IMG/VR virus record: IMGVR_UViG_3300035698_035366
Coordinates: 124,001-188,000 of that record
Length of the DNA: 64,000 nucleotides
Direction: 5' to 3' (one strand)
Shown: positions 5,874 to 63,999 of the stretch, one piece after another
Layout of the letters: the number at the start of each line of letters is the position of its first letter
How positions within the stretch are numbered: the first letter of the stretch is position 1
Program-made: the position numbers and the translations under genes
The notes under the pieces: generated by a model
Told to the model about the DNA's origin: nothing
Seen by the model: only the letters and a program-made list of their open reading frames with translations
Database searches by the model: none

Positions 5874-7490
<1,617 letters not shown>

Positions 7491-7533
7491 CCTAGCATAA
7501 ATAAAGTATATAATGATAATATAAGGGTTTAAC

Positions 7534-9849
7534 ATGGCTGATAAGTTTGGTCTCTTGGCAGAAAGAATATTTAGTATTTTCAAAGGAACGGGGCACACCC
7601 TTAGACTCTTCGATGAGCAGGGAAACCAAACAATTGATCCTGAAAATGCTCGGCATTTCTTTGCTGTTGAAGACCGTATTATGGTTACTTTGCATCAAGA
7701 CAATGCGGATAACAATGAATTAACGTTAATGATTCCGGAAAAGAATGATAAGGGTGATGTCCGCCATTTTGCCGATATGATTAGATCTTTAAGACGGTCA
7801 GCACAACACTTTAATATTATGTTTACAGTTAGAAAATTTGGGCATGAGATTACACCGAAAGATGTGATCCATAAAATAAAAGAATCATGGAGTAATGACA
7901 TGGAAATCGCAGAACAGATGAATCCAAAGATGACGGGAACCTCTCGCACAAGTCATCAAAAGTGGAATGAAGCAAGACTAATCGTCAAGCACTCAAAAGT
8001 TGTAAATGAAGAACAACGGGGCGCTCGATCCAGAAATATTAGTCGGCTTTTTGTAGAAACCGCTGAAGGCGAACGTTTCTTGTTCCCTACAAAGAACTTA
8101 CAAGCTGCGAGAGCATGGTGTCGTCATCTGGGTGCGGGGGGTGTTGCTAATGACATAGTTAGTGAGCATATCAAAAGCCTAAGCAATGAAATGGAAACAT
8201 TGAAGGAATTTTCCGCACATATTTTCCGCAATAGGACAACTTTGGAAGAATCAGCACTTGCTGTTCGTTCATCTGCCCGCACTAGAATTGACGAGATCCG
8301 TAATGAGCTAGGTCGTTTTATGACTAAGAGAGCATACTTTACGGTTGCTGAAGAAATCGAAAGTTCTGAAACCAGCGGTGATACACTTGTCGAATCACAC
8401 ACCGATTTATCTGAGCGTTTAGAATGGTTGTCAGACACGTTAGCTATTGCAGAAGATCATGATTTATATGGTAAATTGTCTTCTTTAGTTGAATTTACCG
8501 AACCAGCTGTTGCTGACGAAGAACCAATGGAAGGACAATTTACTCCGGACGATGTTGCCCAAGCATATGAATTCCGTGGTGCAGATAATGCAGCCCGTGA
8601 CCCGGAAGGCACATTTGATTGGGAAGCAATCAATAAAGATACTCCTCCGGAGCACAAAGATCACCTGAAACCACCTGCCGTAGAACGTTTATATTTTGAA
8701 GAAGCTGCGGCCCTACTTAATACAAATGATTTTACGTTTTTTGACAAATACACCGATGACGACGCAAACAAACCAGATGAATGGACCCCTCGTGGAAAAT
8801 TAGCTTGGCGTTTAGCTTCAATCGCAAAGAGACTTGATCCAAAGGTTAAGGGACAATTGGTTCTTTCAAATATTCTTTCCTATGTGGCAGATAAGATGCA
8901 AGAAGGCGCAAGACCAAATCCACAAGCACAACGCATCGCTGGTCACTTCATTACAAATATTGCTCCAACAATTCATGAATCAATCAGCGTTCGTTTAGCA
9001 CAAATTGAAGAAAGTGTAAAACTTGGAGAATCATGGCTTGAAGATTTGGAATCAGCGGTTAATGATTTAGAAGCAGAGCTCGAAGCATTCATTGACAATG
9101 ACAGTGAATATGGCGCAGTTGACCCATTAATATACGATATGGCACAAGCCTATGGTGTAGATGTAGCAAGCTTGGCCAATGCATTCCACGACATGAAAGG
9201 TATACCACCAGAAGACTTCGTGTTTCGCGGTCGATCATTTGGTGAAAGCCGTGAACTAGACGAATGGTTCGAAGGATTTGATCCATTGAGAATTATTAAG
9301 GAATCTTCAAAAAAACTAACCGATGATATTCCAGTAATTCCGGGTGACATGGGAAAGGATTTTGAGGATGAAATTACAACCGATGGTTATGACCATGGTG
9401 AAGACGCGCAAAACATTATAAACTCAAACGACGAAATCGATACAGAGATGTATGAAGAAGTTGAATTGGCTAACGGTATGAAAGTTAAGTTTACTCCGGA
9501 TTATGCTGGTAATGACGCCGGTGAGGTTTTCACTTTAACGGGATGGGATGGCAAGCGTGGTCGAGTTGAAGATTCTCAAGGTCGTGGTTGGGGGGTTAGT
9601 GGTTATCAAATCGAGCCAGCTTTTTCAAGTCAAGACGACGATTACGATGATGATTCAATCCCAACGCAGGGATCATCCCGTGATCTGAGAGATATTAATG
9701 AAATTGCAGAATGGGCAGCTGATGCAGTTACCGATGGTAGAATGAATTTTGATGAAGCCGTTGAAGATTATTACCAAGACAATTTCGAAGAGAGTGGAAT
9801 TATGATTGGTAAATTCGAACAGATGGTTCAGGCACATTTGGATAGCTAA
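7534..9849 (+). CDS. Large hypothetical virion/head-associated protein with acidic modular C-terminal half
   Basis: 771-aa ORF after CATAAATA (7496). Many x-x-E sites (IKES, LVES, IHES, LGES, FGES). Shares a module with 3418..5472. Confidence 0.6.
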   Translation: MADKFGLLAERIFSIFKGTGHTLRLFDEQGNQTIDPENARHFFAVEDRIMVTLHQDNADNNELTLMIPEKNDKGDVRHFADMIRSLRRSAQHFNIMFTVRKFGHEITPKDVIHKIKESWSNDMEIAEQMNPKMTGTSRTSHQKWNEARLIVKHSKVVNEEQRGARSRNISRLFVETAEGERFLFPTKNLQAARAWCRHLGAGGVANDIVSEHIKSLSNEMETLKEFSAHIFRNRTTLEESALAVRSSARTRIDEIRNELGRFMTKRAYFTVAEEIESSETSGDTLVESHTDLSERLEWLSDTLAIAEDHDLYGKLSSLVEFTEPAVADEEPMEGQFTPDDVAQAYEFRGADNAARDPEGTFDWEAINKDTPPEHKDHLKPPAVERLYFEEAAALLNTNDFTFFDKYTDDDANKPDEWTPRGKLAWRLASIAKRLDPKVKGQLVLSNILSYVADKMQEGARPNPQAQRIAGHFITNIAPTIHESISVRLAQIEESVKLGESWLEDLESAVNDLEAELEAFIDNDSEYGAVDPLIYDMAQAYGVDVASLANAFHDMKGIPPEDFVFRGRSFGESRELDEWFEGFDPLRIIKESSKKLTDDIPVIPGDMGKDFEDEITTDGYDHGEDAQNIINSNDEIDTEMYEEVELANGMKVKFTPDYAGNDAGEVFTLTGWDGKRGRVEDSQGRGWGVSGYQIEPAFSSQDDDYDDDSIPTQGSSRDLRDINEIAEWAADAVTDGRMNFDEAVEDYYQDNFEESGIMIGKFEQMVQAHLDS

Positions 9850-9852
9850 GTC

Positions 9853-10437
9853 ATGCGCTTAGTTGAATTCGAAGATCCTGGAGTTTATGTTGCGTTTAAA
9901 CTTGATTTATCAAGTGCTACGCAATTATCAGATTTTGTTGAAAACGAGTTGGACATGAAGCCAATTCCTAAAGATTTAATGCATGTCACAGTGGCGTCAT
10001 TCAAAACTGGAACCATTAATGAGTCGACCTTTCCAAAAATAAATTTCCCAATTGAAATTGATATTGCGGATTCATTTAGTACCTTTGGTTTCTTTACACT
10101 TCCATTTAAAGGGATTTATAATGCTGCATATATCAATCTAGAAAATAACCGAGAACTAATGATTGCTAGGGGTAACATTTTAGATTGGATGGACGATTGC
10201 GGAATATCAACAAAAACACCAGGTGGTAGATTTAGAGCCAGATGGCGGGGATGGACCCCGCATGTTTCTGTTACTTTTCAGGATACAGAAAAAAATAAGC
10301 TTCCTTGGGAAGGGGGTAATATGATTAAAGTCAAAAACTTTTTAAGAGGGACTGTGGATCTACCAATTTCAACTATAAAAGTGTCAGATATAATTCTAAC
10401 GCCGCATGATAAGAATTGGGGAGCAGATTTAGTTTAA
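9853..10437 (+). CDS. 2H phosphoesterase, Acb1 (T4 gp57B)-like
   Basis: Two HxT/S motifs (MHVTV, PHVSV). GVYVAFK near the N-terminus and a W-x-x-D-L C-terminus parallel T4 57B as I recall it. Confidence 0.75.
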   Translation: MRLVEFEDPGVYVAFKLDLSSATQLSDFVENELDMKPIPKDLMHVTVASFKTGTINESTFPKINFPIEIDIADSFSTFGFFTLPFKGIYNAAYINLENNRELMIARGNILDWMDDCGISTKTPGGRFRARWRGWTPHVSVTFQDTEKNKLPWEGGNMIKVKNFLRGTVDLPISTIKVSDIILTPHDKNWGADLV

Positions 10438-10462
10438 CTATTTGAAATATATTGTTTAACTT

Positions 10463-10489
10463 GGGCGGGAGAAATCCCGTCCTTTTTTT
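10463..10489 (+). terminator. Intrinsic terminator
   Basis: GGGCGGGA-GAAA-TCCCGTCC followed by a T7 run. Confidence 0.85.
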
Positions 10490-10697
10490 GTGATTTTTTC
10501 ATTGATTTTTCGCCTATTTTTATATTGTTATTAACTTCAAGTATAAATATAATTAACATACAGTAAAGGGAAGCTTTATTGTGTGTTTAGGCAAAAGCAA
10601 AAAGTATTGGTGAAGTATTCATATTTTAATATTGATATCTTCACTGTACAGGCATTATATTATAGGCACTAACATAGGCAAAAAGGAAAACATAACT

Positions 10698-11759
10698 ATG
10701 GCAACATTAGCAGAAATCAGAGCAAAGCTCGCAGAACAAGAAGACCGTAAGTCATCTTACGGAAACAAAAAATCCAACAACGAAGTATATCCATTCTGGA
10801 ACATCGCAGACGGCTCAACGGCATTAGTCCGTTTCCTACCCGATGGCGATGACAATAATATCATGTTCTGGAAGGACCGTCAGATTATTAAGATCCCATT
10901 CGATTATGAAGGTAAGGAAGTTGAAGTCCAAGTTCCTTGCATGGATATGTATGGTAAGAAGTGTTTCATCACAGAAGAAATTAAGCCTTGGTGGAATGAT
11001 GACGACCTAATGCCACTAGCTCGTAAGTATTACAAGAAGCGCTCATATATCTTCCAGGGATTTGTGGTAAATAATCCACTTGAAGGCGATGAATGTGAAA
11101 CACCAATCCGTCGATTCGTAATCAATAAGAGCATTTTTGATATCATTAAGGCCAGTCTGCTAGATGCGGATATGGAAGATAGCCCAGTAGATTTTGATGC
11201 TGGTCGTGATTTCAAGATTACTAAGACAAAGAAAGGTAAGTATGCAGATTATACTACATCTGCATGGTCTATGAAGAGCCGCTCACTAAGCGACGAAGAA
11301 CGCGCAGCAATTGTTGAGCCAGGTCTTCATAATTTAAATGATTTTCTTCCAAACGAACCAAACGAAGAACAGCTAGTAGCAATCAAAGAAATGTTTGAAG
11401 CTAGTGTTAACGGTGACCCATACGATCTAAATCGTTGGGGCAACTTTTACCGTCCATATGGTATCCAGGCTCCAGAAGAATCCTCATCAGCCCCTGTTTC
11501 AAAGCCTACTACGCCCAAGCCAGTAGAAAAGGTAGCTGAAAAAGCAACTGAAACAGTCGTTGAAGACTCCGATGACAGCGTCCCTTTTGATGTCGACGAG
11601 TCAAACTCTCCAAAAGAAGACTCTTCAGCAGTTTCGTCCTTGAAAGACCGTGTTGCTGACGATGCACCTGCCCCTACAGGTAGTGATGATAGCTCGGAAG
11701 ATAAGCCCGATCCAAAAGCTATTATTGCGATGCTTCGTAACCGCAAAAAAGCTGAGTAA
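10698..11759 (+). CDS. Single-stranded DNA binding protein (T4 gp32-like)
   Basis: MATLAEIRAKL, ALVRFLPDGD, KRSYIFQGFV, GRDFKITK…YADY, acidic tail. ATG 10698 follows AGGA. Confidence 0.9.
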   Translation: MATLAEIRAKLAEQEDRKSSYGNKKSNNEVYPFWNIADGSTALVRFLPDGDDNNIMFWKDRQIIKIPFDYEGKEVEVQVPCMDMYGKKCFITEEIKPWWNDDDLMPLARKYYKKRSYIFQGFVVNNPLEGDECETPIRRFVINKSIFDIIKASLLDADMEDSPVDFDAGRDFKITKTKKGKYADYTTSAWSMKSRSLSDEERAAIVEPGLHNLNDFLPNEPNEEQLVAIKEMFEASVNGDPYDLNRWGNFYRPYGIQAPEESSSAPVSKPTTPKPVEKVAEKATETVVEDSDDSVPFDVDESNSPKEDSSAVSSLKDRVADDAPAPTGSDDSSEDKPDPKAIIAMLRNRKKAE

Positions 11760-11771
11760 GAAGAGCATATC

Positions 11772-11811
11772 TACCGGACGGTGCTCCCCGCGCCGTCCGG
11801 TACCTTTCTTT
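11772..11811 (+). terminator. Intrinsic terminator
   Basis: TACCGGACGGTGC / GCGCCGTCCGGTA stem followed by CCTTTCTTTT. Confidence 0.8.
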
Positions 11812-11881
11812 TATAGTATTACTTAAAAGATAAGCGTAGGATATAAGTATGGTTGGTTACAAAAAATGAGGAAAAATAAAA

Positions 11882-13018
11882 ATGAAACCATTTGATTTAA
11901 CAAAATTTCGTAAAAAAGTAGATGGAAAAATTGAAGGCCTTAGCGTTGGCTTTCATGACCCAAGCACTTGGTTGTCTACTGGTAATTATACGCTCAACTA
12001 TTTGATCAGCAACAATTTCCACCGCGGTATTCCACTAAGCCAAATAACAATGTTGGCAGGTGAATCGGGTTCCGGTAAGAGTTTGATTGCTGCTGGTATC
12101 ATTAGTTATGCACTTGATAACGGTATTTCGGTCGTGGCGTTTGATTCAGAGAATGCATACACTGAAGAATGGTTAACAAAAGCTGGTGTTGATGTTAAAA
12201 AGTATGACAAGGATCTCGGTGGTAATGGTATGCTTATGCGTATCCAGGTTAGTCTTGTTGATACTGTTGCAGAGACAATTTCCAGTTTTATGGAAGATTA
12301 TAAGAGAGAGTATAAAGACGTTGACCGCGATGACCGTCCACCTATGCTCATTGTCGTTGACAGTCTTGGTATGTTATTGACTCGTACTGATATGGATCAA
12401 TTCCAAAAAGGCGACCTTAAAGGTGATATGGGTCGTAAGCCAAAGGCGCTAAATGCTTTGGTAAGAAATTGTGTCGTTCAGTTCGCTGAATATAATGTTG
12501 GAATGTTGGCAACTAACCACACTTATGCATCACAGGACATGTTTGACCCAGATGATAAAATTTCTGGAGGTGGTGGATTTATCTTTGCTTCAAGTATTGT
12601 TATCGCAATGCGAAAATTGAAGCTAAAAGAAGATGAAAGTGGTAACAAAGTAACAGATGTTCGTGGTATACGAGCAGCCGTTAAGGTTGTGAAGTCCCGC
12701 TATAACAAACCATTTGAATCAGTGCAAGTTCGTGTTCCATATGAATCAGGAATTGATCCATACTCTGGTCTTGTTGATTTATTTGAAAAGCAGGAATTGC
12801 TAGAAAAGGTTGGTAATAAATTACAATATGTGGATTTAGAAGGAAATGAACACAAATATTTCCGTAAGTATTTTTTCACAGAAAAAGGCCATGAACTACT
12901 AAATCTTATGATGGCTGAACATGATGCACAAATGAATCTCAAACATGCATCCGGAGAGTTTGAGGTTATGGACGAACTAGAAGGAGAGGAAGGGGACGAC
13001 GATGAATCTATCGAGTGA
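11882..13018 (+). CDS. uvsX: RecA/UvsX recombinase
   Basis: AGESGSGKS Walker A, IVVDSLG Walker B, GDMGRKPK and SGGGGF motifs. Confidence 0.95.
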   Translation: MKPFDLTKFRKKVDGKIEGLSVGFHDPSTWLSTGNYTLNYLISNNFHRGIPLSQITMLAGESGSGKSLIAAGIISYALDNGISVVAFDSENAYTEEWLTKAGVDVKKYDKDLGGNGMLMRIQVSLVDTVAETISSFMEDYKREYKDVDRDDRPPMLIVVDSLGMLLTRTDMDQFQKGDLKGDMGRKPKALNALVRNCVVQFAEYNVGMLATNHTYASQDMFDPDDKISGGGGFIFASSIVIAMRKLKLKEDESGNKVTDVRGIRAAVKVVKSRYNKPFESVQVRVPYESGIDPYSGLVDLFEKQELLEKVGNKLQYVDLEGNEHKYFRKYFFTEKGHELLNLMMAEHDAQMNLKHASGEFEVMDELEGEEGDDDESIE

Positions 13019-13235
13019 TTTCGTAGCTGATTTTTGGGAATCAGTAAAACCATTGGTTACTAAAGAGAACCGTGAAGAATTTGTAGAAAAACTTTATATT
13101 ATTCTTCAGGAGTATGGAACAGACCCAGACGACTTAAAGGCCGCTGGCCATGAGGATGAAATCCTTGACATGGTTTGGGAAAATATGTTTCATGACCCTG
13201 ATGCGGAATTTTTTGAAGACGACGATGAAATATGA
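13002..13235 (+). CDS. Small acidic hypothetical protein
   Basis: 77-aa ORF overlapping the uvsX end, with RBS AGGGGA. Confidence 0.65.
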   Translation: MNLSSDFVADFWESVKPLVTKENREEFVEKLYIILQEYGTDPDDLKAAGHEDEILDMVWENMFHDPDAEFFEDDDEI

Positions 13236-13251
13236 GCGAATTTGAAAATTA

Positions 13252-13740
13252 ATGGACAGATATTACCAAGTTACCTCTGCCAATTCTGATGATCTTTCGG
13301 AGTTAGTGTCAGCTGTTGCTGATATTTTAAGCTATTTCGAAGATGAATATATGGAAGGCAAAATTGATATCCAGATTAAGGGGGCGGTCGAACGGGCCGC
13401 CTCCAAAATCCCTGGTATCACCGAGCATCGATGGTCACAACTCCAAGAATTAGAGGCCATTGTTGTTTATATTGAAACCGTTGTAAAAAAAGCTAAACAG
13501 CGAGCATTCAAGAAATATTTTGAAAATTACAACCGCCAGCTATCGAGTCGCGATGCGCAAATTTATGCAGACGCCGATGATGATGTTTTGAATAAAGCTG
13601 AGGTTTTGAACCAAGTTACCTTCATGCGTAATAAATTTTTAGGAATTTATAAGAGCATCGAAGCGAAGCATTGGCAACTCAACAACATAACAAAGTTGCG
13701 AACATCCGGAATGGACGACGCGTTTATTGATTACGATTGA
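13252..13740 (+). CDS. uvsY: Recombination mediator UvsY-like
   Basis: Helical protein with KKYFENYNRQLSSRDAQIYADAD and K-W-Q-L-N-N-I-T-K-L-R pattern, directly after uvsX. Confidence 0.75.
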   Translation: MDRYYQVTSANSDDLSELVSAVADILSYFEDEYMEGKIDIQIKGAVERAASKIPGITEHRWSQLQELEAIVVYIETVVKKAKQRAFKKYFENYNRQLSSRDAQIYADADDDVLNKAEVLNQVTFMRNKFLGIYKSIEAKHWQLNNITKLRTSGMDDAFIDYD

Positions 13741-13748
13741 TTATATAC

Positions 13749-13777
13749 TTGACTTATCATATTATGCTATGTATAAT
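13749..13777 (+). promoter_or_regulatory. Sigma70-type promoter
   Basis: TTGACT-17 nt-TATAAT. Confidence 0.8.
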
Positions 13778-13803
13778 TAAGTTTAATAGATAGAGGTATA
13801 TCA

Positions 13804-14517
13804 ATGTCGACGCACTTAGAAACCATTGTTGAAGAAGTTGCAGGTATATTCCATCATCTTCAATGGGACCAAGATAAATCCTTGAAAGTTTCACCCGCTG
13901 ATTTCAAATTCATTACTGATATCGCTGGCAAAACGAGTCAAGGTAAGCAAATCTCAACCAAGCAAGCCGAGGTTGCAATTCGTATTTTGCAGAAATATAT
14001 TACTGTACTTCCCACAAGGGACAATTTTCCATGGTCTGAGGAAGAGTTAAGCGCGGCAATTTCTATGCCCATTTATCGTCAACCCCCCTATCAAAGCGTT
14101 CCAGTCCGCCGTGAAGTTCGGTATATTGGTAATCGCAAAATAGCACTTCGGTCGAAATTTTCCCCTCAAGTTACGAAGAGGATACGATCAACAGTTGATA
14201 AAAAATGTATCCGTAATGTTATTGGTCGTTCTAGATATAACCATAACCAATTTGATTTTCCACGTTTTAATAAGAAACACAGACTCTGGGTAATCGAGGT
14301 TACCGAGGGAAACCTAGAAGCTGTAATGAGAACAGTTAAGAAAGCTAATTTTGAGTTCGATGATTCGGTCGTACAATTTCTAACGGATTGTGCAAACACC
14401 GTTGAAAACGAAACCACTATCAGCTCGGTTGATAATGAAATTGAAATTATCGTACAAAACGATGAATTTATGTCTTTGTGGTTAGATGATACCTTTAAGG
14501 AGAAGAAAAGTGTTTGA
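13804..14517 (+). CDS. Hypothetical protein
   Basis: 237-aa ORF with RBS GAGG, after the sigma70 promoter. Confidence 0.6.
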   Translation: MSTHLETIVEEVAGIFHHLQWDQDKSLKVSPADFKFITDIAGKTSQGKQISTKQAEVAIRILQKYITVLPTRDNFPWSEEELSAAISMPIYRQPPYQSVPVRREVRYIGNRKIALRSKFSPQVTKRIRSTVDKKCIRNVIGRSRYNHNQFDFPRFNKKHRLWVIEVTEGNLEAVMRTVKKANFEFDDSVVQFLTDCANTVENETTISSVDNEIEIIVQNDEFMSLWLDDTFKEKKSV

Positions 14518-15445
14518 TCGAGTAAGAATACCGAGAACTCCAAAGAACGCCCGGAAATTGATATATTGGGGGAATGTGAATTATACCACAATTCCTGATG
14601 ATCTTCAGAACCTTGCAATGCAGGATCATGTTTACCATCCAGATCCACAAGTACAAGAAGCCTGGCAGTATCTCATTGACAGAGATAATCGAGCAGTTAT
14701 TATGAACGATGTAGATGATATGCATCGTAATAAGAATCTTGTTTTTGATCACTTCACTAATCAAAAATTATTCCCGATGGTAATTATCGCTACTGAAGAG
14801 TTTGATGAATGGCTTAAAATTGCCAGCAATTTTGCAACTACGCATGAAAAGACAATGCAGATTGTGACAGGTAAGGATAATGCAAGTTCAATCGATGAAA
14901 ATTTAAAAACATCTGTGGTCGAAAACGCTGAAAACGGCCATGACATCTATGTCATAGACACAGTAAAAGATATAAACATTATATTGGACAGTATTTTTCC
15001 AGCAACTTCGATAAAATCATTAATTTATGATGTCACGGAAAAACACAGAGACAAAGGCCAGAGTAATCGGTATACTTTTGGTCTCCGCCAACGATATGAG
15101 TCTAACGACACTCTTCGGGCATTGTTTCTGGAAATCCCAAATGCTGTTATTCTTGCATCATACGAGGATATTTTTTCATTGCATAAAGGAAATAATGGGA
15201 AAAGAATAAACGATGTATCTTTGGATACGGAAGGTTTTGCATTTATTAACCATTTGCTGTATAATGAGAAAATACTACCAAAAGCATTCCCAATTGAACA
15301 TGATAGTATCAAGAAACAATTAAGCGACAGTGGTTATAAACTAACCGACGAAACGTTTTTAGCATACTTTCCTTTAATTGGCATTTCAACCGCCCTTTTA
15401 GGAGACAACCATGGATCAACTGCAAACAATGTCATTCCTGAGTAG
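14510..15445 (+). CDS. Hypothetical protein (possibly a degenerate helicase-like alpha/beta fold)
   Basis: Long ORF with a probable GTG start at 14510 after AGGAG. No intact catalytic motifs were recognised. Confidence 0.5.
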   Translation: MFDRVRIPRTPKNARKLIYWGNVNYTTIPDDLQNLAMQDHVYHPDPQVQEAWQYLIDRDNRAVIMNDVDDMHRNKNLVFDHFTNQKLFPMVIIATEEFDEWLKIASNFATTHEKTMQIVTGKDNASSIDENLKTSVVENAENGHDIYVIDTVKDINIILDSIFPATSIKSLIYDVTEKHRDKGQSNRYTFGLRQRYESNDTLRALFLEIPNAVILASYEDIFSLHKGNNGKRINDVSLDTEGFAFINHLLYNEKILPKAFPIEHDSIKKQLSDSGYKLTDETFLAYFPLIGISTALLGDNHGSTANNVIPE

Positions 15446-60722: not shown

Positions 60723-60730
60723 TATTTAGC
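60723..60730 (-). promoter_or_regulatory. Late-promoter variant GCTAAATA
   Basis: Upstream of the ligase/NTase polyprotein. The same 8-mer lies upstream of genes at 2556, 28878, 32886, 37522 and 48827. Confidence 0.55.
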
Positions 60731-62837
60731 GACGTCTAATTGTATTAAACAGGGTTCGGAATTCTATAAATGCCGTGGTCATTTCGCCTCTCGAGTCCGA
60801 ATATGCAATGTCATATGCTAGATCCATTAATCTCTCAATTTCATCACTGGTTGCCTTCTTTCGAACAATAACAACTAAACGTACCCATCTAAATGGCACT
60901 GGATATCCCGGATACTTATCACCTCGAACTGGTCTATAACCAGTATCAGGAACTGATTCCTCTGGCACCGGCACTATGGTATCAGACATTTTTTCTGTTT
61001 CAATTTCAGTTGTTATATTAAACGATGATTCAGTTGTGGTTTTCTTCTCCCCGAGTTCAGTAGTCTGAGACCCATCTGACCATTTAATTGTTGTAACTGT
61101 CCAAGTTGTTAAAGTGGTAACGGTTTCAGTTTTAATTTGGAAATGATGATCTTCATAAACAACTGTATGAACATCACCATTGTCATGTGTGTGGGTTTCT
61201 GTTCTTTGTTCAACATGGGTCTCTTGACGAATTGGATCCAAAACTTGGATATTTTCAATTTTTTCAAGGTTTACAAATCTACCAGTTTCTTTTAGTTCTT
61301 TCTCCAAAATGGGTGTAAGTTTACTGTCGATAACTTCGTGAGAATGCGATACACTAACATCATCCTTGATTGTAATGCCCTCAAATGGTTCACCCTGTTT
61401 AACACCAATTGTACCATCAGAATATTTGGTTGTTGTAACCCATGCTTTGGTTATTATTGTGGAAATTTTTATCGTTGTAACGTGTTTGTAAAAACGAACC
61501 AACTCCCACAGGATAGAACCATCACTTTGTTCCGTTTCTTGTTCCTTATCTTCAAACGTAGTAACTGTTATTGGATCACCTTCACTTACCACTGTTGATA
61601 ATGTTTTGTATTCAGTCTTAACATCAACCACAGTAATTTCCTCAACAACCGGCTCTGGTTTAGCTTTTTCAATAATTGGTTCTAGATCAACATATAACGC
61701 TCTATTTGCTGAGGTTTGTGTAGCTCTTGAATGTAATGCTAATGTATCTTTGATAGATGAATTAACAACCCATTCATGAACATGTTCAACGTCCTTTGCA
61801 TTAGCGGTTGTTTCCATTCCTTGAGCATAAAGGGCGCAGGCTCCAGCAACGTGGGGTGAAGCCATCGAGGTACCTGAAAGCATATTTTCAGAATCAACGC
61901 CATCTTTTCCAGCAGCGCAAATATAATGGCCAGGGGCAAAAACGTCAACTGTTTTACCATAATTGGAGAATGAAGAAATTCTATCCTTGATATCATGTGA
62001 ACCAACAGTAACAGCGCGGGCAACTTCAGCAGGCATAACATCGTAACCAACTTCTGCAAGATCCCTGCCATCGTTACCAGCAGCAACAACACAAATTATT
62101 CCTGCATTGATGCAGTCATTTACAACCTGTTCTTCGGTCTTGTGTGCTGGCCCACCAAGTGATAGGTTCATAATGCTTGGGTTCATATTACCTTGAGCAC
62201 GCTTATTACGGTGATGCTTTAGGCACGCATCAATTCCAGAAACGATAGCAGCAAGAGAAGCACCACCAGTTTCAAACACCTTACTAATAAGAAGATTGCA
62301 TTCCTTAGCTACGCCATACTTCACCCCACCAACTGTAGATGCAACATGAGTTCCATGTCCCTGTTGATCAAACCCATAACCTGTTTGTCCTTTCTTCGCA
62401 TAGTAATCGAAGATTGGAACAGCGCGGCCTTGGAAATCATTATGAGAAAAGTTACAACCAGTATCAACTATATAAACGTCAACATTTTTTCCTGTTCGGT
62501 TATATTCGTATTTTCCATTAAATGGGTACCAGTTGCTATCATTCCATTCGTCACCGTGTGTAATTCTACTTAGTCCCCAATTATCACCAAAACCATATCG
62601 GGAAACAGCAATATTCTGAATAGCTTTAAATTCAACAATAGCATCCGCGGGTGCGACATGTTCGATCTCTCGTTCAGTTTTCAACTTGGTCTTTTTCATA
62701 TCGTCCATTGTAATTTTGAACATACGCTCTAAACCACGATAATCTTCGTCAATCGTAGCGTTATATCTAGAAGCTAGATTTTTGAATCTTTGGTTACTAC
62801 AACCCATTTTAACTGTTACGATATATTCTTTGTTCAT
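60726..62837 (-). CDS. Subtilisin-like S8 serine protease with I9-like prodomain and C-terminal Thr/Val/Glu-rich repeats
   Basis: VYIVDTG (D), GHGTHVAS (H), AAGN, SGTSMASPHVAG (S). RBS AAGGAG. Confidence 0.92.
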   Translation of the reverse strand: MNKEYIVTVKMGCSNQRFKNLASRYNATIDEDYRGLERMFKITMDDMKKTKLKTEREIEHVAPADAIVEFKAIQNIAVSRYGFGDNWGLSRITHGDEWNDSNWYPFNGKYEYNRTGKNVDVYIVDTGCNFSHNDFQGRAVPIFDYYAKKGQTGYGFDQQGHGTHVASTVGGVKYGVAKECNLLISKVFETGGASLAAIVSGIDACLKHHRNKRAQGNMNPSIMNLSLGGPAHKTEEQVVNDCINAGIICVVAAGNDGRDLAEVGYDVMPAEVARAVTVGSHDIKDRISSFSNYGKTVDVFAPGHYICAAGKDGVDSENMLSGTSMASPHVAGACALYAQGMETTANAKDVEHVHEWVVNSSIKDTLALHSRATQTSANRALYVDLEPIIEKAKPEPVVEEITVVDVKTEYKTLSTVVSEGDPITVTTFEDKEQETEQSDGSILWELVRFYKHVTTIKISTIITKAWVTTTKYSDGTIGVKQGEPFEGITIKDDVSVSHSHEVIDSKLTPILEKELKETGRFVNLEKIENIQVLDPIRQETHVEQRTETHTHDNGDVHTVVYEDHHFQIKTETVTTLTTWTVTTIKWSDGSQTTELGEKKTTTESSFNITTEIETEKMSDTIVPVPEESVPDTGYRPVRGDKYPGYPVPFRWVRLVVIVRKKATSDEIERLMDLAYDIAYSDSRGEMTTAFIEFRTLFNTIRRR

Positions 62838-62885
62838 ACCTGAATCTCCTTAGTCGGAATTATATAATTATTTATCATAAAAGTG

Positions 62886-62916
62886 TTGACTTTCTATAGG
62901 GATTGTTGTATAAATA
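62886..62916 (+). promoter_or_regulatory. tmRNA promoter (sigma70 -35/-10 overlapping a T4-type late TATAAATA)
   Basis: TTGACT-17 nt-TATAAA(TA). Confidence 0.75.
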
Positions 62917-62920
62917 TACT

Positions 62921-63220
62921 TGTAAATGCTTGATGCTAATAATAGCAAATCAGGACCCGGGCTCGTTCCCGGCATCTCCACCAACACTTCGGTGGCATCT
63001 CTTTTTTATGGGGATGAAAGGTTCGACTGGTGCGTGAAAGTTTAGTTTAGTTTACATCGGATTGGTGAGCCGACCACAAAGTAACCCGTTTTAAATGCAA
63101 ACGACAATGCTCCCGTACAGGAAATGCGCCTAGCGGCCTGATCCTGGTAGGGAAATTCCGGAGACGAATGCGATCTTCGGTGGAGTTTGGAGGGCACTCA
63201 TCATCAGGAGCCCTCCGTTT
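62921..63220 (+). ncRNA. ssrA: Circularly permuted two-piece tmRNA
   Basis: Acceptor piece ends CATCTCC-A-CCA (62973-62983) and comes before the coding piece starting GGGGATG (63010). The two form a 7-bp stem with G3:U70. Tag ANDNAPVQEMRLAA* at 63097-63141. Outer boundaries are approximate. Confidence 0.92.
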
Positions 63221-63999
63221 TATTCCATAATTTCCAATTCAAGTTCCTCTAATAATATAGAAGAATCACTGCTTTTAGAACTATTTTCAGATACTGTTAA
63301 AAATTCGCAATTTTTTATATGTCCTATTATGGATGGGTCGATTTGATTGTTATAACCATAATGTATACTTAATCGATGATCTTTAACAACCCCACCTGGA
63401 TTATTTTTAGGATGAAACCATCCCAATTTAACCAATAAATCATATCCTTTGATTCCCTTTATATTTTCTGGTGTAATATGAAATGAACAAATAGAACGAT
63501 ATGAATGTATATCTTTTTCAGAACTGGATAAAATACGTTGTTGTTCCTCATTTAATGAGGTTATTTCGTGGTCCATAATTAATTGTAATTCTTTAATTAA
63601 TTCAGAGTATTTAGGATTGGTAATTTCTATTCTCTTTTGTATATGCTCCAATTTTCTAAACGTTGAGAAATTCCTTAAAAACATTTTTCGTATAGATTTG
63701 GTCTTGCGTTTTTGATTAAGTTTATAATAAATAGATTTTGGTATTAAATTATAGGCTAACAGCATCCTGTCCGCAAATATATAATTAGCAAACCCTACAT
63801 CCGATTGATCTATATCAATATTAAATAATGATTTTAACATTAATGATAATTCACTATGTGTTATATTAGGTAATTTCTTTTTGATAACGCCACCAAAGGA
63901 CTGATGCAAATCTGCTAACCCGTCAACTACAATTTCGGTATATGGATAATCGTTACTGTCTGAAGATAATGAACTATTAATATAGGCCCGTAGTTTGAT
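63220..63999 (-). CDS. HNH-like endonuclease; 5' end runs off the window
   Basis: KDHRLSIHYG…IIGHIKNCEFL…ENSSKS. The frame stays open from 63909 to the window edge. Confidence 0.65.
   Translation of the reverse strand: MKLRAYINSSLSSDSNDYPYTEIVVDGLADLHQSFGGVIKKKLPNITHSELSLMLKSLFNIDIDQSDVGFANYIFADRMLLAYNLIPKSIYYKLNQKRKTKSIRKMFLRNFSTFRKLEHIQKRIEITNPKYSELIKELQLIMDHEITSLNEEQQRILSSSEKDIHSYRSICSFHITPENIKGIKGYDLLVKLGWFHPKNNPGGVVKDHRLSIHYGYNNQIDPSIIGHIKNCEFLTVSENSSKSSDSSILLEELELEIME

What the first reader, a model, noticed from the sequence alone, without database searches (positions are those of the whole stretch)
62886..63220. Phage-encoded circularly permuted (two-piece) tmRNA with its own degradation tag
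Seen: acceptor piece first (T-arm CCGGG/CCCGG, CATCTCC-A-CCA), then an intervening segment whose GGTGG pairs with CCACC, then GGGGATG…TTCGAC, a TAAAT-GCA resume site, tag ANDNAPVQEMRLAA, and a closing GGAGGGC/GCCCTCC hairpin. G3:U70 alanine identity is intact; the T-loop looks atypical (CTCGTT). Known: permuted tmRNA is characteristic of Alphaproteobacteria and some cyanobacteria and betaproteobacteria, and LAA ends are ClpXP signals. Inference: the phage supplies ribosome rescue in the host's own architecture, with overlapping early and late promoter elements.
Basis: partly seen in the sequence, partly recalled or inferred. Interest (0 to 1): 0.75.

Follow-up and report, generated by a model that had tools for sequence, protein, structure and literature searches.

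The report
Jumbo-phage two-piece tmRNA gene
A giant bacteriophage from a salt-lake metagenome carries a real but unusually diverged two-piece tmRNA gene, and the same genome also encodes SmpB, ClpX and ClpP, so the phage brings its own kit for rescuing stalled ribosomes and destroying the tagged proteins; both features are already known from other phages.

Summary
Window 62921-63222 (+) is a circularly permuted tmRNA gene. Two Rfam models hit above their gathering scores: tmRNA_permuted at 79.8 bits and alpha_tmRNA at 76.3 bits. ARAGORN misses it at default settings and finds it, with the same tag, only at a relaxed threshold. The likely reason is the 6-nt T-loop.

The record is a 296-kb jumbo-phage contig with a large terminase, virion proteins, 34 tRNA genes and no integrase. 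Its nearest cultured relatives by terminase are Sinorhizobium phage Phosso and Agrobacterium phage Atu_ph07.

New here: the same genome encodes full-length SmpB, ClpX, two ClpP, ClpS, IF-3 and ribosomal protein S21. That covers the whole ssrA tagging and degradation route.

None of this is new in kind. Two-piece tmRNAs are documented in phages. Lak megaphages carry a one-piece tmRNA with SmpB, ClpX and ClpP. Phosso carries a permuted tmRNA and ClpX but no SmpB.

Expression, processing into two pieces and the host could not be tested. Verdict: a genuine, probably functional, new member of a known kind; moderate interest.

The parts
62886..62891 (+). -35-like hexamer TTGACT of the tmRNA promoter
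   Evidence: Read from the sequence. It is one of 39 TTGAC[AT]-N16-18-TATAA[AT] sites in the record, against about 1.8 in Markov simulations; 36 of them are on the + strand. TTGAC is conserved upstream of most of the 7 aligned phage tmRNA genes.
62909..62916 (+). TATAAATA: a -10 element (TATAAA, 17-nt spacer) that also matches the T4-type late-promoter consensus
   Evidence: Invariant in all 7 aligned phage tmRNA genes. Of 51 copies in the record, 35 are intergenic and 20 lie within 60 nt upstream of a same-strand start; some precede tRNA genes. The simple sigma-70 scan does not list it because the hexamer ends in A rather than T.
62921..62983 (+). Acceptor piece: 5' strands of the P2 helices, T-arm (62957-62972, 6-nt loop), 3' strand of the acceptor stem (62973-62979) and encoded ACCA (62980-62983)
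   Evidence: Rfam alignment to RF04321 positions 1-64. ARAGORN -ps80 places the '3' tRNA domain' at 62946-62983. RNAcofold predicts the T-arm and the intermolecular acceptor stem.
62984..63009 (+). 26-nt intervening segment, presumed to be excised. GGTGG 62991-62995 can pair with CCACC 62978-62982, followed by a T-run 63003-63008
   Evidence: Falls in the loop region of both covariance models. Reported as a terminator-like hairpin. The equivalent segment is 20-30 nt in other phage copies and about 400 nt in phage Phosso.
63010..63222 (+). Coding piece: 5' acceptor strand GGGGATG (63010-63016), D-loop analogue GGTTCGAC, 3' strands of P2 (63027-63056), hairpin 63057-63073 (possible PK1 stem), the tag reading frame, a 3' domain and the terminal hairpin
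   Evidence: Rfam alignments and ARAGORN -ps80. With GCA 62945-47 / TGC 63031-33 taken as the register of the third P2 helix, all 27 pairs of P2, T-arm and acceptor stem are canonical. That register shows compensatory changes across phage copies, 17 of 18 cells paired.
63097..63141 (+). Tag reading frame: resume codon GCA, tag ANDNAPVQEMRLAA, stop TGA
   Evidence: Translation, ARAGORN -ps80 and alignment to the resume consensus UAAAUGCAAACGA of both Rfam models.
63189..63224 (+). Terminal hairpin GGAGGGC/GCCCTCC plus T-run: the conserved 3' helix of the tmRNA and probably its intrinsic terminator
   Evidence: Aligns to the 3' end of RF01849. All 7 pairs are canonical and vary across phage copies, for example G-C to C-G and G-C to U-A. 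Predicted by both folds.

Best explanation
Window 62921-63222 (+) is a functional two-piece (circularly permuted) ssrA gene of a lytic-type jumbo phage. Shown: the sequence fits the permuted and alphaproteobacterial tmRNA covariance models. It keeps every identity element: a 7-bp acceptor stem with G3:U70, encoded ACCA, a T-arm, the P2 helices, the resume context, a 14-codon tag ending in LAA, a stop codon and the terminal hairpin. It sits behind a phage-type promoter. The same genome encodes intact SmpB, ClpX, ClpP (two copies), ClpS, IF-3 and S21. Inferred mechanism: one precursor is transcribed from TTGACT-17-TATAAATA, probably both early and late. Host RNases remove the 26-nt spacer, leaving an acceptor piece that ends in CCA and a coding piece that starts at G63010. 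The two pieces pair. Host AlaRS charges the molecule through G3:U70. Phage SmpB, with host EF-Tu, delivers it to ribosomes stalled on broken or stop-less mRNAs. Translation resumes at GCA and appends ANDNAPVQEMRLAA. Phage and/or host ClpXP then degrades the tagged protein through the C-terminal LAA. The likely benefit is to keep ribosomes available late in a long jumbo-phage infection, when host mRNA is being destroyed or translation-targeting defences are active.
For: Identity of the RNA: covariance-model hits above the gathering scores (repeated), ARAGORN -ps80 reporting a permuted tmRNA with the same tag, tag translation, 27 of 27 canonical pairs in P2, T-arm and acceptor stem, and compensatory changes in P2c and the 3' hairpin across phage copies. 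Promoter statistics. Phage identity. An identical gene lies on a second IMG/VR contig from another sample. Partner genes: SmpB at G000 235690-236136, 184 bits on Pfam and 188.7 bits on NCBIfam (cut-off 130), with all invariant SmpB residues kept. ClpX scores 560.9 bits (cut-off 359), ClpP 321 bits (cut-off 308.6), and ClpS and IF-3 are present. The ClpX-to-SmpB gene block recurs in a diverged relative, at 65-83% nucleotide identity and 88% SmpB identity. Precedent: two-piece tmRNAs in phages (PMC9004378); tmRNA and SmpB in huge phages (PMC7162821).
Against: No RNA evidence: no RNA run could be listed, so transcription, processing, charging and tagging are all inferred. The covariance-model score is low for the family: 76 bits, against 100-137 for other phage copies and 222-290 for cellular alphaproteobacterial tmRNAs. 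The T-loop has 6 nt instead of 7 and lacks the usual A58 position, and ARAGORN rejects the gene at default settings. Thermodynamic folding is not significant (z = -1.75). No diverged orthologue was obtained, so purifying selection on this particular gene is untested. PK1 is only a weak 4 + 3 bp candidate. SmpB lies 48.5 kb away and not in the same operon.
Confidence: 0.8

Rival explanations
1. It is the host's own ssrA gene, the classic prophage attachment site, caught inside a record that IMG/VR labels 'provirus'. On this reading it is not a phage gene.
For: IMG/VR classes the record as a provirus. tmRNA genes are common integration sites, and fragments of them occur in prophages (PMC9004378). 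Many SmpB hits in the phage database sit at prophage record ends.
Against: The gene lies at 187 kb of a 296-kb record, with phage genes on both sides: the terminase 57 kb upstream, and endonuclease VII and the tRNA cluster downstream. There is no tyrosine integrase in the record. GC content and the phage promoter class are uniform along the record. The gene is complete, not a 3' fragment, and has the same TATAAATA element as other phage tmRNAs. It scores about 150-200 bits lower than cellular alphaproteobacterial tmRNAs. No near match was found in the 401 alphaproteobacterial genomes searched.
Confidence: 0.03
2. It is a decaying relic of a captured tmRNA. It is still recognisable but no longer works in trans-translation, and may be a non-functional or merely regulatory RNA.
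For: It has the lowest covariance-model score among the phage copies compared. The T-loop has 6 nt. ARAGORN fails at default settings. The fold z-score is not significant.
Against: Decay would be expected to hit the tag frame, G3:U70, ACCA or the stem pairs first, and all of these are intact. The promoter and terminator are intact. The phage maintains an intact SmpB, which has no known role without tmRNA. Alphaproteobacterial tmRNAs already have atypical T-loops, as the RF01849 consensus shows.
Confidence: 0.1
3. The RNA is functional, but its main role is not general housekeeping rescue. It could be a counter-defence against translation-targeting abortive-infection systems (anticodon nucleases, mRNA interferases). 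Alternatively it could serve a selective tagging programme run through the phage's own ClpXP, partly insulated from the host system.
For: The genome also carries T4-type RNA ligase 1 and a kinase/phosphatase-like protein, a Tad6 Thoeris inhibitor, a Macro domain protein and an Smr-domain protein, together with its own ClpX, ClpP and ClpS. SmpB sits on a long branch, not inside any host clade, which argues for long residence in phages.
Against: The evidence is purely contextual. None of these genes is adjacent to the tmRNA. The tag is an ordinary alphaproteobacterial-type ANDN...LAA tag that host ClpXP should also recognise. No SspB-like adaptor was found.
Confidence: 0.2

Closest known systems
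Two-piece tmRNAs of marine phages (OM43 phage Melnitz, pelagimyophages, cyanophages; PMC9004378)
   Same: They have the same permuted gene order, an alphaproteobacterial-type tag that starts with AND or ANE and ends in LAA, and a T4-like phage background. TATAAATA sits upstream in the IMG/VR copies aligned here.
   Different: Those copies are found by ARAGORN at default settings, have 7-nt T-loops and score 100-137 bits; ours scores 76-80 bits and is missed. Melnitz has a glutamine riboswitch in the 3' domain, and none is found here. None of the 5 IMG/VR records checked has SmpB.
[quoted passage not shown]
   Same: They have the closest large terminase, at 56% and 51% identity. They carry ClpX, and AP-J-162 has clpX directly next to IF-3, as here. 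Phosso has an alphaproteobacterial-type permuted tmRNA that ARAGORN also misses and that is unannotated in GenBank.
   Different: Neither Phosso nor Atu_ph07 has SmpB, and Atu_ph07 has no tmRNA. The Phosso tmRNA has an intervening segment of about 400 nt, a typical alphaproteobacterial T-loop and a different tag. There is no synteny around the gene.
Lak megaphages of Prevotella and huge phage LR756504 (PMC7162821)
   Same: They carry the same full gene set in one phage genome: tmRNA, SmpB, ClpX and ClpP.
   Different: Their tmRNA is the standard one-piece form (RF00023), with no permuted hit. They belong to an unrelated phage lineage with Bacteroidota hosts, and their SmpB is only 41-45% identical.
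Cellular alphaproteobacterial two-piece tmRNA (Caulobacter type; RF01849)
   Same: It has the same architecture, G3:U70, the resume context UAAAUGCAAACGA, and an ANDN...AA tag.
   Different: Cellular copies score 222-290 bits against 76 here. No close match was found in the 401 sampled alphaproteobacterial genomes. Ours has a shorter T-loop.

Membership tests
Two-piece (circularly permuted) tmRNA / ssrA | Permuted gene order: the 3' acceptor half and T-arm lie upstream of the 5' acceptor half and the mRNA-like domain | tested here: met
   RF04321 matches over its full length 1-213 at 79.8 bits. ARAGORN -ps80 reports 'Permuted', with the 3' tRNA domain before the 5' domain.
Two-piece (circularly permuted) tmRNA / ssrA | tRNA(Ala)-like acceptor stem with G3:U70 and a 3' ACCA | tested here: met
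   The 7-bp stem 62973-62979 / 63010-63016 includes G63012:T62977, and ACCA lies at 62980-62983.
Two-piece (circularly permuted) tmRNA / ssrA | T-arm with a canonical 7-nt T-loop | tested here: inconclusive
   The 5-bp T-stem is present, but the loop has 6 nt (CTCGTT), a one-base deletion relative to both models and to 5 other phage copies.
Two-piece (circularly permuted) tmRNA / ssrA | Long-range P2 helices joining the acceptor piece to the coding piece | tested here: met
   The four helices have 5, 4, 3 and 3 pairs, all canonical once the third helix is read as 62945-47 / 63031-33. That register covaries across phage copies.
Two-piece (circularly permuted) tmRNA / ssrA | Resume codon in the consensus context, followed by a short tag ORF that ends in hydrophobic residues and a stop codon | tested here: met
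   UAAAU-GCA is followed by ANDNAPVQEMRLAA and TGA.
Two-piece (circularly permuted) tmRNA / ssrA | Pseudoknot PK1 upstream of the resume codon | tested here: inconclusive
   The hairpin 63057-60 / 63070-73 is modelled by RF04321. A 3-bp loop-to-downstream pairing (63063-65 / 63074-76) is possible by eye only.
Two-piece (circularly permuted) tmRNA / ssrA | Precursor processed into two RNA molecules; alanylation; SmpB-dependent tagging | not testable with these tools
   No RNA run could be listed, and the DNA runs gave only low-depth contigs.
Alphaproteobacterial tmRNA lineage (RF01849) | Score above the family's gathering threshold and best hit within the tmRNA clan | tested here: met
   The score is 76.3 bits against a gathering score of 50, and the hit wins the clan competition.
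Alphaproteobacterial tmRNA lineage (RF01849) | Descent from, or use in, an alphaproteobacterial host | tested here: inconclusive
   The nearest cultured phages infect Rhizobiaceae. No close tmRNA was found in 401 alphaproteobacterial genomes, and the SmpB tree places the phage protein on a long unresolved branch. Melnitz shows that tmRNA type need not match the host.
Phage-encoded (not host) gene | Embedded among phage hallmark genes and not at an integration junction | tested here: met
   Large terminase, virion proteins, DnaB and ribonucleotide reductase; 34 tRNA genes; no integrase; a phage promoter class along the whole record.
Complete ssrA tagging and degradation pathway in one phage genome | tmRNA, SmpB, ClpX and ClpP all present and intact | tested here: met
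   NCBIfam equivalog cut-offs are passed for SmpB, ClpX and ClpP. The SspB adaptor is absent.

The most novel reading that the evidence does not exclude
The phage runs a self-contained quality-control circuit that is partly insulated from the host. Its parts would be a diverged tmRNA with a shortened T-loop co-adapted to the phage's own long-branch SmpB, an Smr-type nuclease that creates the substrates, and phage ClpXP, ClpS and a second ClpP that dispose of the products. The circuit would be used as a counter-measure against host defences that attack tRNA or mRNA, not as simple housekeeping.
Probability: 0.15. Interest if true: 0.65.

Novelty: new member of a known kind. Interest (0 to 1): 0.4.

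Why it matters
The finding adds a clear case in which a second, unrelated lineage of very large phages has assembled the whole trans-translation and tag-degradation route: tmRNA, SmpB, ClpX and ClpP. Here the tmRNA is in the two-piece format. This suggests that ribosome rescue becomes limiting in long jumbo-phage infections.

There is also a practical point. This gene and the one in Sinorhizobium phage Phosso are invisible to ARAGORN at default settings, and the two published surveys of phage tmRNAs read here used ARAGORN. Permuted tmRNAs in jumbo phages are therefore probably under-counted, and covariance models should be used as well.

Tried and rejected
- **Diverged orthologue for covariation or selection tests.** I walked the 48.5-kb contig of the closest relative (SmpB 88% identical) in four look-ups. 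It ends about 0.8 kb short of where the tmRNA would lie. Contigs carrying homologues of the two flanking genes have no tmRNA. The IMG/VR scan returned only an identical copy and unrelated phage tmRNAs.
- **Natural variants.** Laying Logan contigs from four salt-lake runs gave only a few identical low-depth fragments.
- **RNA evidence.** No RNA run could be listed.
- **Host inference.** A BLAST of the tmRNA against 401 alphaproteobacterial genomes matched only the T-arm and acceptor region at 86-88%. The SmpB tree is unresolved, with a long branch, and some of my automatic translations in it were poor.
- **Thermodynamic folding.** The precursor fold is not significant (z = -1.75) and does not reproduce P2. 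This is uninformative for tmRNA and does not count against the finding.
- **Glutamine riboswitch in the 3' domain, as in Melnitz.** Not found.
- **Host att-site reading.** Rejected; see the rival explanations.
- **blastn of the locus against the phage collection.** No match.
- **Complex prediction of SmpB with the RNA.** Not run, because the tool gives no verdict for RNA partners.

Full report
**Observation.**
- T-stem: CCGGG 62957-62961 / CCCGG 62968-62972, around the 6-nt loop CTCGTT.
- Acceptor 3' strand: CATCTCC 62973-62979, followed by ACCA 62980-62983.
- Spacer: 26 nt, 62984-63009. Its GGTGG (62991-62995) can pair with CCACC (62978-62982) and is followed by a T-run. The terminator scan reports this as its only hit.
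- Acceptor 5' strand: GGGGATG 63010-63016, which gives G3:U70 as G63012:T62977.
- TTCGAC lies at 63022-63027.
- TAAAT 63092-63096 precedes GCA 63097.
- The frame 63097-63141 translates to ANDNAPVQEMRLAA*.
- Closing hairpin: 63189-63195 / 63210-63216, followed by TTTT.

**Is it more than chance?** An Rfam scan of the whole 64-kb window at gathering thresholds gives exactly two hits, both here. RF04321 tmRNA_permuted covers 62921-63141 at 79.8 bits (gathering score 47, E 1e-13). RF01849 alpha_tmRNA covers 62868-63219 at 76.3 bits (gathering score 50, E 6e-19). Both are full-length matches (repeated). ARAGORN finds nothing at default settings. With the threshold lowered to 80% it reports a permuted tmRNA with the same two tRNA-like domains, the same resume site and the same tag. 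At default settings it detects 8 other phage permuted tmRNAs, all with 7-nt T-loops. It misses this one, its identical copy and the one in phage Phosso.

The Rfam alignment flags only two non-canonical pairs, in the third P2 helix. Shifting that helix to 62945-47 / 63031-33 makes all 27 pairs of P2, T-arm and acceptor stem canonical. In an alignment with five other phage copies, that register is paired in 17 of 18 cells, with compensatory changes. The terminal hairpin also covaries, for example G-C to C-G and G-C to U-A. Plain thermodynamic folding recovers the T-arm, the intermolecular acceptor stem and the terminal hairpin but not P2, and it is not significant (z = -1.75).

**What genome is this?** The window is bases 124001-188000 of a 296,119-bp IMG/VR record that is labelled 'provirus' and estimated to be 79% complete. 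The same phage occurs on contigs of 362,903 and 407,795 bp. The runs that hold it are salt-lake metagenomes. It is a jumbo phage, on this evidence:
- a large terminase (phrog_36964, E 2e-144), virion structural proteins, DnaB and ribonucleotide reductase in the window;
- 34 tRNA genes clustered at 245-279 kb;
- a tail-fibre adhesin-like protein and T4-type RNA ligase, and endonuclease VII;
- even GC content of 34-43% along the record;
- no tyrosine integrase.

The closest large terminases are those of Sinorhizobium phage Phosso (56%), Agrobacterium phage Atu_ph07 (51%), Pseudomonas phage PA5oct (50%) and Klebsiella phage RaK2 (47%). The tmRNA gene lies between two convergently and divergently arranged phage genes: a 703-aa subtilase at 60726-62837 (-) and a phrog_23051 protein at 63220-63909 (-). 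The host att-site explanation is therefore rejected.

**Promoter.** TTGACT (62886-91), a 17-nt spacer and TATAAATA (62909-16) precede the first modelled base (62921) at the distance expected for a transcription start.
- The pattern TTGAC[AT]-N16-18-TATAA[AT] occurs 39 times in the record, against about 1.8 in first-order Markov simulations. Of these, 36 are on the + strand, and one lies directly before smpB.
- TATAAATA, the T4 late-promoter consensus (from my own knowledge), occurs 51 times. Of these, 35 lie in the 12% of the record that is non-coding and 20 lie within 60 nt upstream of a same-strand start. It also precedes several tRNA genes.
- It is invariant upstream of all seven aligned phage tmRNA genes.

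Timing of expression is untested.

**Partners elsewhere in the genome.** These all lie outside the window.
- The record encodes a 148-aa SmpB at G000 235690-236136. It scores 184 bits on Pfam and 188.7 bits on NCBIfam (cut-off 130), keeps every invariant SmpB residue and has the basic C-terminal tail.
- It also encodes a bona fide ClpX at 212486-213739 (560.9 bits; cut-off 359), with IF-3 directly downstream.
- ClpP lies at 10127-10768 (321 bits; cut-off 308.6), and a second ClpP-like gene at 223391-223957.
- Also present are ClpS, HSP20, ribosomal protein S21, a Macro domain protein, Tad6 and an Smr-domain protein.
- SspB and RF-1-family proteins were not found.
- A diverged relative (65-83% nucleotide identity; SmpB 88% identical) keeps the order ClpX, IF-3, Macro, S21, HSP20, ClpS, Tad6, ClpP, SmpB. 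This block is therefore a conserved module of the phage lineage.
- The phage SmpB is about 55% identical to the best bacterial SmpBs; the named ones are mostly Sphingomonadales and other Alphaproteobacteria. In a tree it sits with its phage relative on a long branch that is not resolved into any clade. This argues against a recent capture.

**Mechanism.** Shown: the gene anatomy and the presence of the partner genes.

Inferred from the established biology of two-piece tmRNA (Keiler, Shapiro and Williams 2000, as cited in PMC9004378) and of the ssrA-ClpXP pathway:
1. A single precursor is transcribed.
2. The spacer is excised.
3. The two pieces pair.
4. The molecule is charged with alanine through G3:U70.
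5. SmpB delivers it to stalled ribosomes.
6. The tag is added.
7. ClpXP degrades the tagged protein through the C-terminal LAA.

Why a phage would want this is inference only. Plausible reasons are sustaining ribosome availability while host mRNA is degraded, or countering defences that cleave tRNA or mRNA. The RNA-repair, Tad6, Macro and Smr genes fit the second idea but do not prove it.

**Comparison with what is known.** Phage two-piece tmRNAs are established. PMC9004378 reports tmRNA in 402 of 18,146 phage genomes, comprising 133 unique forms of which 53 are two-piece; these include Melnitz and the pelagimyophages. Huge phages carrying tmRNA and SmpB are mentioned in PMC7162821. The checks made here:
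- Lak megaphages and LR756504 carry a one-piece tmRNA together with SmpB, ClpX and ClpP, and have no permuted tmRNA.
- Phosso carries a permuted alphaproteobacterial-type tmRNA. It is unannotated, has a spacer of about 400 nt and is missed by ARAGORN. Phosso also carries ClpX but no SmpB.
- Atu_ph07 has ClpX only.
- AP-J-162 is reported to have a tmRNA and clpX next to IF-3 (PMC11242549).
- None of five IMG/VR records with permuted tmRNAs has SmpB, although these records are 6-87% complete.

The combination of a two-piece tmRNA and SmpB in one phage was therefore not seen in the comparators I checked. It is a recombination of known parts, not a new kind of system.

**How this copy differs.**
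- It is the most diverged copy examined: 76-80 bits, against 100-137 for other phage copies and 222-290 for four cellular alphaproteobacterial tmRNAs.
- It has a 6-nt T-loop.
- No close match was found in 401 sampled alphaproteobacterial genomes.
- There is no glutamine riboswitch in its 3' domain.

**Limits.**
- No RNA data could be listed.
- No sequence variants were found.
- No diverged orthologue of the RNA was obtained.
- The host is undetermined.

**Verdict.** This is a new member of a known kind, with two useful additions: the complete SmpB/ClpXP partner set in the same genome, and the detection blind spot in ARAGORN.

Noticed in passing
G000 235690-236136 (+), outside the window (L002:1492-1938): A full-length phage SmpB lies 48.5 kb downstream of the tmRNA. 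A consensus TTGACA-N17-TATAAT promoter ends only 6 nt before its ATG (G000 235656-235684). That would imply a leaderless mRNA or a mis-set start codon.
   Followed up: partly
G000 212486-224000 (L105, L106), outside the window: A conserved translation and proteostasis module: ClpX, IF-3, Macro domain protein, ribosomal protein S21, HSP20, ClpS, Tad6 (a Thoeris inhibitor) and a second ClpP. It continues to SmpB after an inserted 1830-aa gene. The gene order is the same in a diverged relative (L125, L126).
   Followed up: partly
G000 6769-15300 (L104), outside the window: A canonical ClpP lies next to a T4-type RNA ligase 1 and a Metallophos plus P-loop kinase protein, a possible tRNA-repair pair. 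A MoxR-like AAA protein with a DUF2201 metallopeptidase/VWA protein lies just upstream.
   Followed up: no
G000 203442-203891 (L138:7442-7891): An Smr-domain protein (36 bits). SmrB-type nucleases cut mRNA at collided ribosomes and feed tmRNA rescue. The relative also has a PTH2-like gene nearby, which was not confirmed in this genome.
   Followed up: partly
G000 244882-279137: 34 tRNA genes lie in a loose 34-kb cluster, and several are directly preceded by TATAAATA.
   Followed up: partly
window 62978-63008: The CCACC/GGTGG hairpin plus T-run lies immediately after the encoded CCA and looks like an intrinsic terminator. It would compete with the acceptor stem in the precursor, and it could be a processing or attenuation signal.
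   Followed up: no
L007:1501-2190 (-) = PV764938.1 349553-350242: Sinorhizobium phage Phosso has an unannotated permuted tmRNA (108-113 bits) with an intervening segment of about 400 nt. Read by eye from the alignment, the tag is ANDNVSTKVALAA. ARAGORN misses it.
   Followed up: partly
L129:1675-2142 (+), ENA contig ctg144206 (unrelated phage-like contig): A GOLLD-RNA-like match of 134.5 bits (E 3e-36), just below the family's gathering score of 150. It lies next to a homologue of the gene that flanks our tmRNA, near a tRNA and a class-I lysyl-tRNA synthetase family gene (PF01921).
   Followed up: no
window 60726-62837 (-): A 703-aa subtilase (S8) is divergently transcribed from the tmRNA promoter region. 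Homologues at 42-52% identity occur in other phage-like contigs next to gp38/Laminin_G tail-fibre-like genes and tRNAs, but without a tmRNA.
   Followed up: partly
whole record G000: IMG/VR labels the record 'provirus', but no tyrosine integrase or host flank was seen. The label probably comes from trimming a 363-kb contig that is rich in bacterial-like genes (Clp, IF-3, SmpB).
   Followed up: partly
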